Below are positions 9,739 to 57,615 of a DNA stretch of 64,000 nt, one piece after another. The first letter of the stretch is position 1. Every line of letters begins with the position of its first letter. The notes beneath the pieces are model-generated. The model was not told the origin of the DNA. It saw nothing but the letters and a program-made list of their open reading frames with translations, and did not search any database. Both the position numbers and the translations under genes were made by a program. The stretch comes from Podarcis cretensis (Eukaryota). The stretch lies in the NCBI GenBank assembly GCA_951804945.1, contig OX638155.1, positions 17,422,001-17,486,000 on the forward strand, in the 5' to 3' direction.

Positions 9739-10093
9739 TTATCATGTCCCTTCCCCACCTGCAATAAAACCCAGGTATTTTTGCTACATTGTGCACTAAT
9801 TCTGCTCTCTGGACAAACACACAAATGAGCTGATGGTGGGGCAATTGCAACAGTGCACTGGGATAGTACAATGAAGCCCTCAGGGTTTTCTTCTTACAAA
9901 CAGCAAAGATAGCAGAAATTACTCAAAGGTGTAAAGAGCAACCTTCTGAAACATCAACAACCCCACCCCACGCCACCCACCCTCTCTCTTCTGTTACACA
10001 TTTGACTAGAAAAAGATAACAGCTCCATGAATTCCAGCAAGTTAATTGCTGATCTTTCAGAACAGATTCAGTGCTGAGTTTGATTCTTTTAAA

Positions 10094-10329
10094 NNNNNNN
10101 NNNNNNNNNNNNNNNNNNNNNNNNNNNNNNNNNNNNNNNNNNNNNNNNNNNNNNNNNNNNNNNNNNNNNNNNNNNNNNNNNNNNNNNNNNNNNNNNNNNN
10201 NNNNNNNNNNNNNNNNNNNNNNNNNNNNNNNNNNNNNNNNNNNNNNNNNNNNNNNNNNNNNNNNNNNNNNNNNNNNNNNNNNNNNNNNNNNNNNNNNNNN
10301 NNNNNNNNNNNNNNNNNNNNNNNNNNNNN
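10094..10329. other. Assembly gap (236 N)
   Basis: Run of N. Confidence 1.
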
Positions 10330-11001
10330 AATAAGACATCTCCATTCCTCCTCTCTGCAAACTTCCTACGCAGCAAGCAAACTCAGAAGAATGCACCTTT
10401 GCATACAGTTGACCTGAGACTCCACCATTGCTTGGCATAAGTAGGAAGAGAGCTCCCTCCCTCAGTAACAGTCTTTCTGTCTTTTTCTCCCAGAATAATG
10501 ACTACTCCTAGTCCTTCACAGTATCAATATAACTAAGGACATCAAAGCAGGACATCAAAATAACTTATTCCAATTACAATAGAAATTCCAATATCTCTGC
10601 ATATATATTTTTCAATTTGTTATTATTTAACGTGGAGTGGAAAACTTGCAATTAATGCCTATTGGTCACCATAGCCACACACTGCATTGTATTTCTGCAA
10701 AGCACTGTGCAGGGAAATCAGAAGCAAGCCCCACCAGGCTCCAGGGGAAAACATTTATAGGATTTCAGCCTTAACCATACAAAACTGGAGCACGAAGAGG
10801 GAAGAGCATTCAAAGAACATATGCTATTGCCCTTTGCTTCTGCCAGAAGCTCTTTTTCCTTAAACTAATATTTTTGGTCGTGAAGGCGGCACTGATTTAA
10901 AGTTGCTTCAACCATAGAATTCTGCATTTACAGGGAGGAGTCAGGCTAATACCCTGCCCAAGAAACAGCAAGTGTTTCTTTCATATGACTAGTGCTTTTT
11001 T

Positions 11002-11559
11002 TTTTCCTTCAAAAAAATTGGAATATTTATTCCAGCAGCTTTAAAATATATGCAAAGAACCTATGCAGAACAGGCCAAAGAGAGGCTATCTCCTTCCCTT
11101 GCTCCCCAAAAGTCCACCTAGTAGCTGGCCCTCAGTTGGTGAGGGTAATCAGTGCTTCCACCAGGTTCCCCATGTGTTCCCGCAAGCTGCATTCTGCTGC
11201 TGCCCTGGATATTTCCATCTCGTTCATAATCAACTCCAAATCTTCTTTCTTGATTGTGACTTTGGCCAGTTCTTTTTCCTGCTCCTGCTTTGCTTTCTGC
11301 TCTGTGGATCTTCGGTCTCCAATCACTGATATTGCCGTTTCCAAGTTGGAGCTCTGGATCTCTTTCTCCTCCGCGTAGTCAGTGATGCGCTCAAGGTTGG
11401 CTGCTCCGCTGTCGTGCTTCTGCGGCTTCTCGGCTGGTTGCTCTCTGCTGCCTGCCAAGCCATTGGGCTCTGCTTCTAACTCAAGCTCAACATCCCCTTC
11501 AGCTGCCATCGCTTCGTCTGCCTTCCGCGCTCGTCGCGTGGTAAGGGGCGCTTCCGGAA
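11002..11559 (-). pseudogene. HYPK: Processed retrocopy of huntingtin-interacting protein K; intact 125-aa ORF at 11132-11509
   Basis: Intronless ORF MAAEGDVELELE...KHDSGAANLERITDYAEEKEIQSSNLETA...VTIKKEDLELIM..MEISRAAAE.SLREHMGNLVEALITLTN matches HYPK. AATAAA at 11026-11031(-) lies ~20 nt before the poly(A) (T-run 10996-11005). The 5'UTR is CpG-rich. TSD GCTTTTTT at 10994-11001 and 11560-11567. Confidence 0.93.
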
Positions 11560-11592
11560 GCTTTTTTCTAAAAAATTCTTTAGGGGTACTCT

Positions 11593-12274
11593 AAGCTCAA
11601 CATCAAAAAAACGAAGATCATGGCCACTGGGCCCATCACCTCCTGGCAAATAGAAGGGGAAGAAATGGAGGCAGTGAGAGATTTTACTTTCTTGGGCTCC
11701 ATGATCACTGCAGATGGTGACAGCAGTCACGAAATTAAAAGACGCCTGCTCCTTGGGAGAAAGGCGATGGCAAACCTAGACAGCATCTTAAAAAGCAGAG
11801 ACATCACCTTGCCAACAAAGGTCCATATAGTTAAAGCCATGGTTTTCCCAGTAGTAATGTATGGAAGTGAGAGTTGGACCATCAAGAAGGCTGATCGCCG
11901 AAGAATTGATGCTTTTGAATTATGGTGCTGGAGGAGACTCTTGAGAGTCCCATGGACTGCAAGAAGATCAAACACATCCATTCTTAAGGAAATTAGCCCT
12001 GGGTGCTCACTGGAAGGACAGATCATGAAGCTGAGGCTCCAATACTTTGGCCACCTCATAAGAAGAGAAGACTCCCTCGAAAAGACCCTGATGTTGGGAA
12101 AGATGGAGGGCACAAGGAGAAGGGGACGACAGAGGACGAGATGGTTGGAGGGTTCTTGAAGCGACAAACATGAGTCTGACCGAGCTGCGGGAGGCAGTGG
12201 AAGACGGGTGCCTGGCGTGCTCTGGTTCATGGGGTCACGAAGAATTGGACACGACTAAACGACTAAACAACAAC
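11593..12274 (+). mobile_element. Bov-B (RTE) LINE, 5'-truncated 3' fragment
   Basis: RT C-terminal ORF 11620-12159 (…RRIDAFELWCWRRLLRVPWTARRSN…RLQYFGHLIRREDSLEKTLMLGK…RRRGRQRTRW). Tail (ACGACTAA)2(CAA)n. TSD ACTCT at 11588-11592 and 12275-12279. Confidence 0.93.
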
Positions 12275-15200
12275 ACTCTCATTTTCCTACTCATATTGAA
12301 ATACTGCCCCTCAATGAGGCCAAACTGAGATTCACAAAATGTTTAGGGGTATGCGTATCCCCCGGGGGAAAAAAGCACTGCATATGACTATGTAAAAACA
12401 GAAGCCCCTATCGGCAGTCTGAAGTGCCACCATCCAGAAAAAAGGTTTACCATTTATTTCTATTGTATCAACTAGTTCTAAGAGAAAGGAAAAGGTGAAG
12501 AGGGGAGATTGAGGAAACAGTGCTTAGAGCACCTTTCACCTCATGCATTTTGCTTTAAGGTAAGGGCTATTGTTACTCTTCTCAAAAGAAAACATTGGCT
12601 TCCATCAGAATTCCTTGAACGTTTTACCTGGGAAATGCACTTTCAAGATTTCATTTTAGGTCAGCCTGGGTGATAGACAAGGGGTGGGTTTATCAATATA
12701 TTTTAGACTCCTTTAGTATTCCTCTGATATTTCATGATATTTCACTCCCAAATTCAATTCCACATTCATTTCAGGAGAAATGTCTGTAGCAACTCTAACC
12801 CCGAGTGTTGTCCTCCTAACTGCACTGAACCATCCAATTTTGAAAGGAAGGAATTCATGGATCATGAACAGAATTCTGTTTTTGCTCTAGCAGCATAGGC
12901 CTATCTGACAATACCCTTGAAGAATTTACATACTTCTCTGTCTTGATGTTTAGTAAGTCATCAGTAAACATGGGCATTCTTGCATTTCAACAGGGCCCTT
13001 GTTCTTCCCCACCTAAATTATGCTTGAGCCACTGGGGTGTAGCAAAACAAAAAAAAGGCTCTTCCAAAGATATGTCCCTCACCGGTAAAATTTGTCCCCC
13101 GGTGCCTCGCCAATTTTTATTGTAATTAAAAATAGCGTAAGTGCCCTTGAACATAAAACGGATGTGTTTGTGAGCATTTTACCTAATTTTGATACAACAA
13201 TTGAAAGAAGCCATGCATGCAGAGGATCTAATGAGGTGAGGAAGCAATTACAGAGAAGTCAAGATGTTTCAGATCTGGCTCATGAATCATTACCTTCCGT
13301 ACAGAGTAACATAAACAAACTACCCAGAGAAATAGAGGAGAAGAATCATACGCATAGATACACATTTTCCTCCTCTAATAGTCAATGATGTAAGGGAGAG
13401 AATATATACAAAGTTCTTGATGCTCAATGTCTGTGTTCCTGTATTAATTCTTGACCCTTTTTGTTTCAGGTCAGTTAAGCATGGTAGCCTCTTTGCCTTT
13501 TATTTAGCAGAAAATCTGCCAGTTTTCAGGCATGCAAATAGGCCTGGCAGAAAATCAGGGTTTTGCACAATGTCTGCTTACATCACAAAAACACTGATGG
13601 CTCCCTAAAGCAGAAAAAACCCCAATAATAATTCCTTTGGTAGTTCTTAGGTTCAAAATGACTTTGAGAAGCTGTTTAACATTCGAAAAGGTACCTTTCC
13701 CTCCTCTCAGCTTATAGATGGCATCACTCTCACCCTCACTAGAAAAGTGATTCAGTAGCATATAAACATTTAGGGGGGGGGAGTCAGTCATTTTCCACTA
13801 ACTTTTGCTGTTACTTCCTATGGACTCTCTATAGAGCTGGGCATTTTGAAAAACGTCAGATACATAATCTCCCTGATCTTGGGCCATACATACACAGAAA
13901 AGGGCTTTAGTGCAATTTCATGTTAGTGGTGCTATGTGCATTTCGCCTAGTTTAAATGCTAGGTGTTGGATAATCGGTAGTATTCTTATTCATCAGTTGG
14001 GCGGTGAGAGGAACATGGATGGCTTAATCCCACCTTCAACTCTCCGTTCCTTACCTCAAACAGTTAACCGGTGCTGTTTTAATACGTATTTCCACCTTCT
14101 TACATACTGGAATTGCATATCTGGGAGACTTGCCGGGCAAAAGTTCATAGCCAGTTTTGCAATGCAGATCTCAATCATCAATGTTCATCACAAACATCAT
14201 TTACAACTTGTTTAATTGCATCTTGTACATTCAGTCACTACTTTGTTTTTCACAGATTGGGACTATTATGCAGAAAAGTGAATGCGTGGTTTAAGCCGTG
14301 GAAGCAGAAAATCACAAATACTGTATTTACAGCACCCCCTACAAGTAGTTACTCCCATGGGTTTGGGTATCAACCTAGAACCACAGTAGACCTCCAATTT
14401 CTATACTGGTTATCTAGTATGTAATGCTCTTGAATTCAAATCCAGGCAGGATCTGGGGGAGAAACCATGGAATACCAGTTGATTTTAAAATTTAATCAGA
14501 ATGCCCTCCAAAACCCACCTCCCCTAATACACCAATAAAGGGATGGATCCCAATCCAGTATGAAAATGCTCTGCCCATTTCGCATGACTTTGGAAGCTGC
14601 ATTGCAAATCAGGGCAAGTGGATAGCAAAACCATTCCCATCTTGCCAAATAAGAGTGTCTGGGCGCACGTGTTAAGGTTGTCTTGCATTTCCCATGTTCC
14701 AGTGCCATGAGTGGGCAGTATTTTCACCCCACTGCCTCAATACCAGAAGTGAGAGAAATATGCAGGGTGGTTTTATACAGTGGCCTTAGGTCATATGTAC
14801 TGAATAGGGCAAGGGCAAAAGAGTCAATTGGGTCTTTACATGCAGGCTGGAAGCAAATTGCTACTCCAGCTCCCATGACCAATTCCAGTCTAGTTTTTGC
14901 AGTATTTTTACAGCAAAATGTGGCCCCTAAATCCATTGGAAACCACTGTTTGTAACAAGCCACTGTTAACATCAATTCCCATCTCCACACTGAAATCCTG
15001 TTCATGACACTTCACAAGTTCCTCTGAGCTAAAACTGACTCAGTTCCCTGTTCCTACTATGTGCTGCTTAGAGCCTAGAAACTCACCTACAACCTTCTGG
15101 CTGCCCACTTATGGATCCAAGACCATTCCTTTGCAGAAATTATATTACTTTGTCTAGTCTCTATCACTTTTGTAAAGGCAGGTCACTTATCCGGACTCTG

Positions 15201-20867: not shown

Positions 20868-21003
20868 CAGGCATAGGCAAACTCGGCCCCCCAGGTGTTT
20901 TGTGACTACAACTCTCATCATCCCTAGCTAACAGGGCCAGCGGTCAGAGGTGATGGGAATTGTAGTCACAAAACACCTGGGGGGTCGAGTTTGCCTATGC
21001 CTG
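20868..21003. mobile_element. hAT palindromic MITE
   Basis: Same TIR; perfect TSD TTCTACAA. Confidence 0.92.
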
Positions 21004-36834: not shown

Positions 36835-36966
36835 CAGCAGTTCTCAACCTGTGTGTCCCCAGATATTGTTGGACTACAACTCCCATCATCCCTGAGCCTT
36901 GCTAGCAAGGGGTGATGGGAGTTGTGGTTCAACCACATCTGGGGATCCACAGGTTGAGAAAGGCTG
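36835..36966. mobile_element. hAT palindromic MITE
   Basis: TIR CAGC.TTCTCAACCT; perfect TSD ATCTAGAT. Confidence 0.88.
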
Positions 36967-52965: not shown

Positions 52966-53101
52966 CAGGCATAGGCAAATTCCAGCTCTCCAGATGTTTC
53001 GGACTACAATTCCCATCATCCCTGACCACTGGTCCTGTTAGCTAGGGATGATGGGAATTGTAGTCCCAAACATTTGGAGGGCCAGAGTTTGCCTATGCCT
53101 G
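52966..53101. mobile_element. hAT palindromic MITE
   Basis: TIR CAGGCATAGGCAAA; perfect TSD GCCTAACT. Confidence 0.92.
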
Positions 53102-57394: not shown

Positions 57395-57615
57395 GCTGCC
57401 ATTCCTGCACTGCAGGGGGTTGGACTAGATCACGCACCCCCAAACTCAGCCTTCCAGCTGTTTGGGGACTACAATTCCCATCATCCCTGACCACTGGTCC
57501 TGTTAGCTAGGGATGATGGGAGTTGTAGTCCCAAAACAGCTGAAGGACTGAGTTTGGGGATGCCTGGACTAGATGATCCTCAATGTCCCTCCACTTCTAC
57601 AATTCTATAATTCAT
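57395..57615 (+). mobile_element. CR1 3' end split by a MITE
   Basis: GGGGGTTGGACTAGAT|GATCC…TTCTACAATTCTAT terminus. Confidence 0.7.
57431..57566. mobile_element. hAT palindromic MITE
   Basis: TIR CAGGCATCCCCAAACTCAG; perfect TSD GACTAGAT. Confidence 0.9.

What the first reader, a model, noticed from the sequence alone, without database searches (positions are those of the whole stretch)
10982..12388. A tiny hAT MITE carrying a full HYPK retrogene plus a Bov-B fragment: a candidate gene-carrying (Pack-type) transposon
Seen, in order: CATATGAC | TAGTGCTTTTTT | HYPK mRNA copy (minus strand, poly(A), AATAAA, 5'UTR) | GCTTTTTT CTAAAAAATTCTTTAGGGGT ACTCT | Bov-B 3' fragment | ACTCT CATTTTCC…GGGGGAAAAAAGCACTG | CATATGAC. 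There are three nested TSDs (8, 8 and 5 bp). Removing both inserts rebuilds a ~138-bp MITE with matching TIRs. Known: 8-bp TSDs mark hAT elements, and DNA transposons can carry host gene fragments. Inference: two retrotranspositions landed 25 bp apart inside one MITE, making a 1.39-kb unit bounded by TIRs that a hAT transposase could move with a complete host ORF as cargo. The left TIR begins with T rather than C, which may have immobilised it.
Basis: partly seen in the sequence, partly recalled or inferred. Interest (0 to 1): 0.85.

Follow-up and report, generated by a model that had tools for sequence, protein, structure and literature searches.

The report
HYPK pseudogene nested in a MITE
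One old copy of a very abundant small DNA transposon in a lacertid lizard genome was hit by two separate retro-insertions, a processed copy of the HYPK mRNA and a truncated Bov-B LINE; the result is an ordinary single-copy nested insertion, not a gene-carrying transposon that has moved.

Summary
An 8-bp repeat CATATGAC flanks terminal inverted repeats. Between them lie a full-length intronless HYPK copy (minus strand, 8-bp TSD, AATAAA, short A tail) and a 5'-truncated Bov-B (5-bp TSD). Removing both rebuilds a 138-bp element.

Contigs and reads from public runs show the host element is a real, very high-copy family. About 100 contigs per genome carry it without the Bov-B, with ACTCT present once.

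- Retrocopy-type contigs have single-copy depth (13.6-15.1 against a flank of 16.8; 19.5 against 24.1).
- Each of two species shows only two HYPK sequence types, the retrocopy and the intron-containing parent.
- The cargo arrived by retroposition, not by DNA capture. Pack-TIR surveys discard such cases on purpose (PMC8277862).

The retrocopy is shared with a second species and with Podarcis lilfordi. It has lost 12 of 32 CpGs and changed residues invariant across vertebrates. Its N:S ratio fits neutrality (P=0.14). An open ORF is expected 24% of the time. No retrocopy-type RNA was seen in one run.

Verdict: ordinary nested insertions, and HYPK is most likely a processed pseudogene. Other first-stage notes report similar MITE-nested retroelements elsewhere in this genome; I did not check them.

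The parts
10982..10989 (.). Left copy of the 8-bp target-site duplication CATATGAC of the MITE
   Evidence: Identical to 12381-12388. The structure exceeds the null in a TSD+TIR scan.
10990..11001 (+). Left terminal 12 nt of the MITE (TAGTGCTTTTTT). It forms most of the left TIR. Positions 10994-11001 (GCTTTTTT) double as the left TSD copy of the HYPK insertion.
   Evidence: 11/12 inverted match to 12369-12380. GCTTTTTT is repeated at 11560-11567.
11002..11559 (-). Full-length processed HYPK retrocopy. A-tail remnant 11002-11005, 3'UTR 11006-11131 with AATAAA at 11026-11031, open 125-aa ORF 11132-11509, 5'UTR 11510-11559.
   Evidence: Pfam UBA_HYPK, E 1.5e-18. 90% identical to Zootoca HYPK and 97% to a Podarcis lilfordi predicted protein. 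A parental genomic contig (X5 record 20) aligns only over 11335-11561, so an intron lies there in the parent. An RNA contig (X15 record 9) is colinear over 11048-11528.
11560..11567 (.). Right TSD copy (GCTTTTTT) of the HYPK insertion. It is also MITE sequence.
   Evidence: The + strand T-run ending at 11001 is the inferred primer for reverse transcription of the poly(A) tail (inference from the TPRT model).
11568..11592 (+). MITE middle piece CTAAAAAATTCTTTAGGGGTACTCT. Its last 5 nt (11588-11592) are the left TSD copy of the Bov-B insertion.
   Evidence: 24/30 match (my hand alignment) to the loose-end consensus that precedes 12275 in 122 and 88 contigs of other family copies.
11593..12274 (+). 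5'-truncated Bov-B (RTE-type LINE) 3' fragment. It holds a 179-aa ORF remnant (11620-12159) and ends in an ...AACAACAAC tail.
   Evidence: ORF hits lacertid proteins at 89-95% and ruminant (Moschus, Capra) RT-domain proteins at about 80%. Word depth is about 10^6. Other copies continue upstream of 11593 and end at 12274/5.
12275..12279 (.). Right TSD copy ACTCT of the Bov-B insertion. It is also MITE sequence.
   Evidence: The joints 11587->12275 have 5 letters that fit either side, in contigs of uninterrupted family copies.
12280..12380 (+). Right 101 nt of the MITE, with the right TIR at 12368-12380 (reverse complement CAGTGCTTTTTTC) and a second AAAATGTTTAGGGGTA motif at 12336-12351.
   Evidence: Depth 3x10^5 to 6x10^5 against 17-24 in the next bin. 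The read consensus of other copies ends ...CAGAAAAAAGCACTG. The direct subterminal repeat is family D11.
12381..12388 (.). Right copy of the 8-bp TSD CATATGAC

Best explanation
A member of a very abundant, short, hAT-like non-autonomous DNA transposon family (about 138 bp, TIR (C/T)AGTGCTTTTTTC, 8-bp TSD) inserted here first.

Later a LINE-encoded endonuclease/reverse transcriptase, presumably L1-type, nicked the + strand at the end of the T-run inside the left TIR. It used that T-run to prime on the poly(A) tail of a spliced, full-length HYPK mRNA. This left a processed copy flanked by the 8-bp duplication GCTTTTTT.

Independently, and in unknown order, a Bov-B element integrated 25 bp away. 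It was 5'-truncated and made a 5-bp duplication.

Nothing has moved since. The composite is single-copy and is inherited vertically by at least three lacertid species. The HYPK copy lacks the parental promoter. It has decayed mainly by CpG deamination and is most likely a silent processed pseudogene whose short ORF has not yet been hit by a stop.

Shown: the boundaries, the TSDs, the reality of the family, the lack of an intron, single-copy depth, orthology in other species, and the decay pattern. Inferred: the LINE that did the retroposition, the order of the two insertions, and silence in this species.
For: Anatomy and family:
- Boundaries and TSDs.
- Statistical excess of the TSD+TIR structure.
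- Family reality, the empty Bov-B site in other copies, and Bov-B ends: (depth table, loose ends at 11593, 12275 and 12361, joints 11587->12275).

Processed origin of the HYPK copy:
- X5 record 20 is a 2264-nt parental genomic contig that aligns only over 11335-11561.
- X15 record 9 is an RNA contig colinear over 11048-11528.
- The AATAAA lies 20 nt before the A-run.

Single copy:
- Retrocopy-type contigs have depth 13.6 and 15.1 against a flank of 16.8 in X1.
- In X5 the figure is 19.5 against 24.1.
- The total depth at diagnostic sites equals retrocopy plus parent contigs (38.3 = 23.2 + 15.1; 43.7 = 24.2 + 19.5).

Vertical inheritance:
- X1 record 3 spans the HYPK/MITE/Bov-B junction with 0 differences.
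- X5 record 19 is the ortholog in a second species (9 differences in 343 nt) and reaches into the MITE middle piece.
- The P. lilfordi protein P0001 shares 9 of the 11 retrocopy-specific residues and reads through the same 5'UTR.

Decay:
- 13 of the 21 CDS differences are CpG C>T or G>A changes in the retrocopy. The CpG count over 11006-11559 falls from 32 to 20.
- 11 differences are nonsynonymous. Six replacements (R30Q, M60I, R69T, R77Q, R107C, V116L) hit residues identical in all five full-length HYPKs from gecko to primate; V42I hits a residue that only the Podarcis retrocopy lineage changes.
- N:S of 11:10 against a neutral expectation of 13.9:7.1, P = 0.14. P(ORF still open) = 0.24.

Expression: at nearly all diagnostic sites 100% of stranded RNA reads carry the parental letter (X23).

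Field definition: PMC8277862.
Against: - The ORF is open in this species and in P. lilfordi. The N:S ratio is somewhat below the neutral expectation, so weak constraint is not excluded.
- The only RNA data come from another species label (organism G). I did not show that this species carries the retrocopy, and the tissue is unknown. Silence in the window's species is therefore not shown.
- Depth from Logan contigs is only a rough proxy for copy number. The tool also filters some human-like records, so a third diverged copy could be hidden.
Confidence: 0.85

Rival explanations
1. The HYPK copy is a functional, lineage-specific retrogene. Its ORF is kept by selection, and it is expressed from a promoter supplied by the MITE or the flank, perhaps in a tissue not sampled.
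For: - An intact 125-aa ORF with a recognisable HYPK UBA domain.
- The ORF is also open in P. lilfordi, where it is annotated as a protein.
- There are 11 nonsynonymous changes against 13.9 expected. NG86 dN/dS is 0.26.
- The retrocopy is several times older than the split of the two species compared. My estimate: 7.4% divergence from the parent against 2.6% between orthologs.
Against: - The deviation from neutrality is not significant (P = 0.14).
- The low NG86 value comes from hypermutable synonymous CpG sites.
- Six replacements hit residues identical in all five full-length HYPKs from gecko to primate.
- An open ORF is expected by chance 24% of the time.
- The directional CpG loss suggests that the copy is methylated and not part of a CpG-island promoter.
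- No retrocopy-type RNA reads are seen among 80-240 reads per diagnostic site.
Confidence: 0.1
2. The 1.39-kb TIR-bounded composite is, or was, a mobile Pack-type hAT element that a hAT transposase has moved with HYPK as cargo.
For: - The outer TIRs are 12/13 complementary with a perfect 8-bp TSD.
- hAT-derived Pack-TIRs exist in animals, and a few are multicopy in frog and alligator (PMC8277862).
Against: - Retrocopy-type contigs have single-copy depth in two species, and there is no third HYPK sequence type.
- The same junctions are inherited at one locus in the two species sampled.
- The single perfect TSD is explained by the original MITE insertion.
- The cargo carries its own TSD and poly(A), so it was not captured.
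- The HYPK insert cuts the left TIR after nt 12 and separates it from the left subterminal motif.
Confidence: 0.02
3. There is no MITE. The outer 8-bp repeat and the 12-nt inverted repeat are chance matches around two adjacent retro-insertions.
For: No second copy of the rebuilt 138-bp sequence lies in the 64-kb window.
Against: - The pieces outside the two inserts are high-copy in two genomes.
- Those pieces occur joined to each other without Bov-B in about 100 contigs per genome.
- Other copies end in ...AAAAAAGCACTG.
- The null expectation for the TSD+TIR structure is 0.09 per window.
Confidence: 0.01

Closest known systems
Processed pseudogenes / retrocopies made in trans by LINE machinery (target-primed reverse transcription)
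   Same: Intronless copy of a multi-exon parent. It runs from the transcript start to the poly(A) site, with AATAAA, an A-tail remnant and an 8-bp TSD whose 3' end is a T-run. It has no promoter and shows CpG decay.
   Different: Nothing essential. The A tail is very short (4 nt beyond the TSD). The LINE responsible in this lizard is inferred, not shown.
Nested transposable-element insertions
   Same: Two younger retro-insertions, each with its own TSD, sit inside an older DNA transposon copy. Removing them restores the host element.
   Different: Two hits 25 bp apart in a 138-bp host is a neat example but is not unexpected. By my rough arithmetic, about 10^4 host copies and 10^5 to 10^6 retro-insertions in a genome of about 1.5 Gb would give dozens of doubly hit copies by chance.
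Animal Pack-TIRs (Tan et al. 2021, PMC8277862), the counterpart of plant Pack-MULEs
   Same: Host-gene sequence lies between the TIRs of a hAT-type element bounded by one TSD. Most animal Pack-TIRs are also single-copy.
   Different: Pack-TIR cargo is copied at the DNA level (gap filling or template switching) and has no TSD or poly(A) of its own. Their pipeline discards intronless copies of multi-exon parents as retroduplicates. This case would be filtered out.
Human ARF6 retrogene inside the hAT-Charlie element MER20 (discussed in PMC8277862)
   Same: A nearly complete retrogene sequence enclosed by a hAT-derived non-autonomous element. The authors themselves note that it may simply reflect retroposition.
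   Different: A different gene and host. The human case is transcribed, and no transcription was seen here.

Membership tests
hAT-type non-autonomous element (MITE) | 8-bp target-site duplication | tested here: met
   CATATGAC on both sides. This holds for this copy only. No other copy of the family with its flanks could be read.
hAT-type non-autonomous element (MITE) | Short terminal inverted repeats that begin (C/T)AG | tested here: met
   TAGTGCTTTTTTC against CAGTGCTTTTTTC, 12/13. The read consensus of other copies ends ...AAAAAAGCACTG.
hAT-type non-autonomous element (MITE) | Multi-copy family that shares the internal sequence and ends | tested here: met
   Word depth 3x10^5 to 6x10^5 against 17-24 in the flank. 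122 and 88 contigs join the mid and right pieces directly. The left terminus of the family was not seen.
hAT-type non-autonomous element (MITE) | Target consensus nTnnnnAn | tested here: inconclusive
   CATATGAC fits at one of the two positions in either orientation. One site cannot test a weak consensus.
hAT-type non-autonomous element (MITE) | Cognate autonomous element with a hAT transposase and the same termini | not testable with these tools
   None lies in the window, and no vertebrate genome or repeat library is on hand.
Pack-TIR / Pack-MULE type gene-carrying DNA transposon | Host-derived sequence between the TIRs of one element bounded by one TSD | tested here: met
Pack-TIR / Pack-MULE type gene-carrying DNA transposon | Cargo acquired at the DNA level, not a retroduplicate | tested here: not met
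   The cargo is intronless against an intron-containing parent. It has its own 8-bp TSD, AATAAA and an A tail. The exclusion rule is quoted.
Pack-TIR / Pack-MULE type gene-carrying DNA transposon | Transposition of the composite (copies with different TSDs) | tested here: not met
   Retrocopy-type contigs have single-copy depth, and two species show only two HYPK sequence types. Caveat: this rests on contig depth, not on a whole-assembly search.
Processed retrocopy (LINE-mediated) | Lacks the introns of the parent and is colinear with the mRNA | tested here: met
   X5 record 20 gives the exon 1/intron boundary at 11335|11336. X15 record 9 is a spliced RNA contig colinear with the copy.
Processed retrocopy (LINE-mediated) | Poly(A) tail after a polyadenylation signal, flanked by a TSD | tested here: met
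   AATAAA at 11026-11031 (minus strand), an A-run of 10 of which 6 belong to the TSD, and the GCTTTTTT TSD.
Functional retrogene | Purifying selection on the ORF | tested here: inconclusive
   N:S of 11:10 against a neutral 13.9:7.1, P = 0.14. Residues invariant across vertebrates are replaced.
Functional retrogene | Transcription of the retrocopy itself | tested here: inconclusive
   No retrocopy-type reads in X23. That run is from another species label and an unknown tissue. No RNA run of the window's species was offered.
Bov-B (RTE-clade LINE) | ORF2 homology with the squamate-ruminant distribution typical of Bov-B | tested here: met
   89-95% to Podarcis and Zootoca proteins and about 80% to Moschus and Capra proteins. 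Longer hits carry RVT_1. The Bov-B name itself rests on my knowledge of that distribution; no repeat library was available.
Bov-B (RTE-clade LINE) | 5'-truncated copies that share one 3' end with a short-repeat tail rather than poly(A) | tested here: met
   Other copies run on upstream of 11593. 131-159 contigs diverge right after 12274/5. The tail AACAACAAC is seen.

The most novel reading that the evidence does not exclude
The T-run/A-run in and next to the TIRs of this MITE family may be a preferred LINE endonuclease target. If so, TIR-bounded retro-insertions would arise repeatedly in lacertid genomes. Other first-stage notes on this genome describe an L1, a CR1 and a polyadenylated retroelement nested in MITEs, though I did not check whether those MITEs belong to this family. 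Somewhere in the clade at least one such composite might have been moved by a hAT transposase. That would be a retroposition-then-transposition route to gene-carrying DNA transposons.
Probability: 0.04. Interest if true: 0.55.

Novelty: new member of a known kind. Interest (0 to 1): 0.15.

Why it matters
It matters little beyond annotation.
- It shows that a TIR-bounded host gene in a vertebrate genome can be a plain retro-insertion into a MITE. This is the false-positive class that Pack-TIR surveys already filter out.
- It flags one Podarcis lilfordi 'hypothetical predicted protein' as probably a processed HYPK pseudogene.
- It documents a high-copy short hAT-like MITE family in lacertids whose TIR holds a good LINE nick site.

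If the retrocopy proved to be expressed and constrained, it would be a lineage-specific duplicate of a chaperone-like cofactor of the NatA N-terminal acetyltransferase complex. That would be of modest interest.

Tried and rejected
- Other copies of the rebuilt MITE in the window: none (blastn-short, TIR pattern).
- Pfam on the Bov-B ORF remnant: no family.
- ESM Atlas on the Bov-B ORF remnant: only unnamed clusters.
- The search of earlier findings by place near and by sequence: blank.
- NG86 dN/dS of 0.26: rejected as evidence of constraint. Five of the ten synonymous differences are hypermutable CpG changes. I replaced it with a class-matched neutral expectation.
- A Bov-B-less state of the locus in organism B: one X5 contig joins 11592 to 12287 at single-copy-like depth. 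It matches only 26 nt on the left, all of it MITE sequence, so it may be another MITE copy. Left undecided.
- The 12-nt repeat AAGCTCAACATC in the HYPK CDS and at the Bov-B start: taken as chance. About 0.1 are expected in 2 kb (my arithmetic), and the Bov-B junction is with the MITE, not with HYPK.
The N block upstream was left alone.
Full report
**Observation**

- CATATGAC lies at 10982-10989 and again at 12381-12388.
- Just inside are TAGTGCTTTTTT (10990-11001) and AAAAAAGCACTG (12369-12380).
- GCTTTTTT occurs at 10994-11001 and 11560-11567, around a minus-strand HYPK copy.
- ACTCT occurs at 11588-11592 and 12275-12279, around a plus-strand LINE fragment.

Joining 10990-11001, 11568-11592 and 12280-12380 gives a 138-bp sequence whose ends are 12/13 inverted. 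I scanned the window for any 8-bp direct repeat that directly flanks a 13-nt inverted repeat. The scan finds this structure at 11/13 as it stands, against 0.09 such structures per window under a first-order Markov null.

**Is the host element a real family?**

No second copy lies in the window, so I laid public data on 10300-13000. The runs were:
- DNA contigs of organism A. Its contigs show 0 differences from the window over more than 1 kb, so it is the window's species.
- DNA contigs of organism B.
- An RNA contig set and raw stranded RNA reads of organism G.

The results were:
- The bin that holds the right MITE part (12302-12392) has a summed word depth of 3.3x10^5 (A) and 5.7x10^5 (B). 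The next bin, which is unique flank, has 19-30.
- In 122 (A) and 88 (B) contigs the sequence beginning at 12275 is preceded by ...TTTTTTTTTTTTAAAAAAATGTTTAGGGGT rather than by Bov-B. By my hand alignment this matches 24/30 of the window's left and middle pieces.
- Contigs with the joint 11587->12275 have five letters that fit either side. ACTCT is therefore present once in uninterrupted copies and duplicated here.
- The read consensus of other copies ends ...CAGAAAAAAGCACTG, the window's right terminus.

An 8-bp TSD together with (C/T)AG-initial short TIRs points to hAT. I could not test the cognate transposase, the family's left tip, or TSD length in other copies.

**The HYPK insert**

The 125-aa ORF (11132-11509, minus strand) has the HYPK UBA domain. 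It is 90% identical to Zootoca HYPK.

It is a processed copy:
- A 2264-nt parental genomic contig of organism B aligns only over 11335-11561. The parent therefore has an intron after codon 58 and unrelated promoter sequence beyond 11561.
- A 492-nt RNA contig of organism G is colinear over 11048-11528 without gaps.
- AATAAA sits 20 nt before a 10-nt A-run, of which 6 nt belong to the TSD.

The geometry fits target-primed reverse transcription. The + strand T-run ending at 11001 would be the primer, so the nick lay inside the MITE's own TIR. That an L1-type element did this is inference.

**The LINE insert**

- Its 179-aa ORF remnant hits lacertid proteins at 89-95% and ruminant (Moschus, Capra) RT-domain proteins at about 80%. 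From my own knowledge, that squamate-ruminant distribution marks Bov-B.
- Other copies continue upstream of 11593, so this one is 5'-truncated.
- 131-159 contigs per genome diverge right after 12274/5, so that is the common 3' end.

**Has the composite moved?**

- Retrocopy-type contigs have depth 13.6 and 15.1 in A, against 16.8 for the unique flank contig. In B the figure is 19.5 against 24.1.
- At diagnostic sites the total depth is exactly the retrocopy contig plus the parental contig (38.3 = 23.2 + 15.1; 43.7 = 24.2 + 19.5). Each genome therefore shows two HYPK-like sequences and no third.
- A contig of A spans HYPK, the MITE middle piece and the Bov-B start (11336-11622) with 0 differences.
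- A contig of B (11250-11591, 9 differences) is the ortholog and reaches into the MITE middle piece.

The composite is thus a single, vertically inherited locus.

**Is it Pack-type by definition?**

The survey of animal Pack-TIRs (PMC8277862) requires DNA-level capture. It explicitly discards intronless copies of multi-exon parents as retroduplicates. It found only 1.4% of Pack-TIRs to be multicopy. It also notes that a human ARF6 retrogene inside MER20 may simply be retroposition. The present case is the same situation, with the retroposition hallmarks intact.

In addition, the HYPK insert cuts the left TIR after nt 12 and moves the left subterminal AAAATTCTTTAGGGGTA motif 566 bp away from its terminus. 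The left-tip T need not matter, because Ac has the same C/T asymmetry (my knowledge).

**Gene or pseudogene?**

I compared the retrocopy with the parental-type contigs of organism A, adding one site seen only in organism G's parental sequences.
- The CDS has 21 differences: 11 nonsynonymous and 10 synonymous.
- 13 of them are CpG C>T or G>A changes in the retrocopy. The CpG count over 11006-11559 falls from 32 to 20.
- Six replacements (R30Q, M60I, R69T, R77Q, R107C, V116L) hit residues identical in all five full-length HYPKs from gecko to primate. V42I hits a residue that only the Podarcis retrocopy lineage changes.
- Given the observed numbers of CpG transitions, other transitions and transversions, neutrality predicts 13.9 nonsynonymous changes. 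P(11 or fewer) = 0.14.
- The same mutation load leaves the ORF open 24% of the time.
- The Podarcis lilfordi protein P0001 shares 9 of the 11 retrocopy-specific residues. Its N-terminal extension is the retrocopy 5'UTR read in frame. It is therefore the ortholog, annotated there as a hypothetical protein.
- Divergence from the parent (about 7.4%) against divergence between orthologs (about 2.6%) puts the retroposition several-fold before the species split (my estimate).
- In the stranded RNA run, reads over HYPK come from the minus strand. At nearly all diagnostic sites all of the 80-240 reads carry the parental letter. That run is from another species label, so silence in the window's species is not shown.

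I rate pseudogene at about 0.85-0.9 and retrogene at about 0.1.

**Verdict**

The Pack-type interpretation is not supported.

By my rough arithmetic, about 10^4 copies of a 138-bp host and 10^5 to 10^6 retro-insertions in a genome of about 1.5 Gb should give hundreds of singly hit and dozens of doubly hit MITE copies. A few should hold a processed pseudogene. Other first-stage notes in this genome describe similar nestings. I did not check them.

Noticed in passing
window 20868-21003, 52966-53101, 57431-57566, 36835-36966: Four palindromic 132-136-bp MITEs, each with a perfect 8-bp TSD (TTCTACAA, GCCTAACT, GACTAGAT, ATCTAGAT) and CAG-initial TIRs. Three share the core GGACTACAATTCCCATCATCCC. 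They belong to a different family from the host of the HYPK insert.
   Followed up: partly
Protein P0001 (Podarcis lilfordi, 135 aa): This annotated 'hypothetical predicted protein' is the ortholog of the retrocopy, not the parental HYPK. It shares 9 of the 11 retrocopy-specific residues and starts at an ATG that corresponds to ACG in the window's 5'UTR. It is probably a mis-annotated processed pseudogene.
   Followed up: partly
window 11573-11588 and 12336-12351: The MITE carries a direct subterminal repeat, AAA(T/A)T(C/G)TTTAGGGGTA, near both ends (D11). Other first-stage notes on this genome describe hAT MITEs with TTAGGG-like units. Whether this is the same or a related family was not tested.
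   Followed up: no
window 12352-12368: Many other family copies diverge from the window after 12361 and read TGCGTCCCCCCAGAAAAAA.... The window's copy seems to have a small deletion or rearrangement just inside the right TIR.
   Followed up: no
window 12148-12208: Compared with most other Bov-B copies, the window's fragment lacks letters around 12148-12151 and 12205-12207, and many copies run on differently at 12149 (tables 4 and 7). This is why its ORF stops at 12159.
   Followed up: no
window 11855-12051: In the RNA run, 142 reads, all with one mate orientation, join 11855 to 12051 with 19 other letters between (tables 5 and 5c). This suggests a transcribed Bov-B-derived variant somewhere in organism G.
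   Followed up: no
window 11297 and 11315: About half of organism G's RNA reads carry the window's letter at these two sites, while neighbouring diagnostic sites are 100% parental. This is most simply a polymorphism of the parental gene in that species.
   Followed up: no
window about 10070-10305: A block of 236 N about 700 bp upstream of the element. The 171-aa 'ORF' at 9923-10438 runs through it and is not meaningful.
   Followed up: no
window 11483-11494 and 11593-11604: An exact 12-nt repeat, AAGCTCAACATC, lies in the HYPK CDS (antisense) and at the first bases of the Bov-B fragment (D14). I judge it to be chance.
   Followed up: partly
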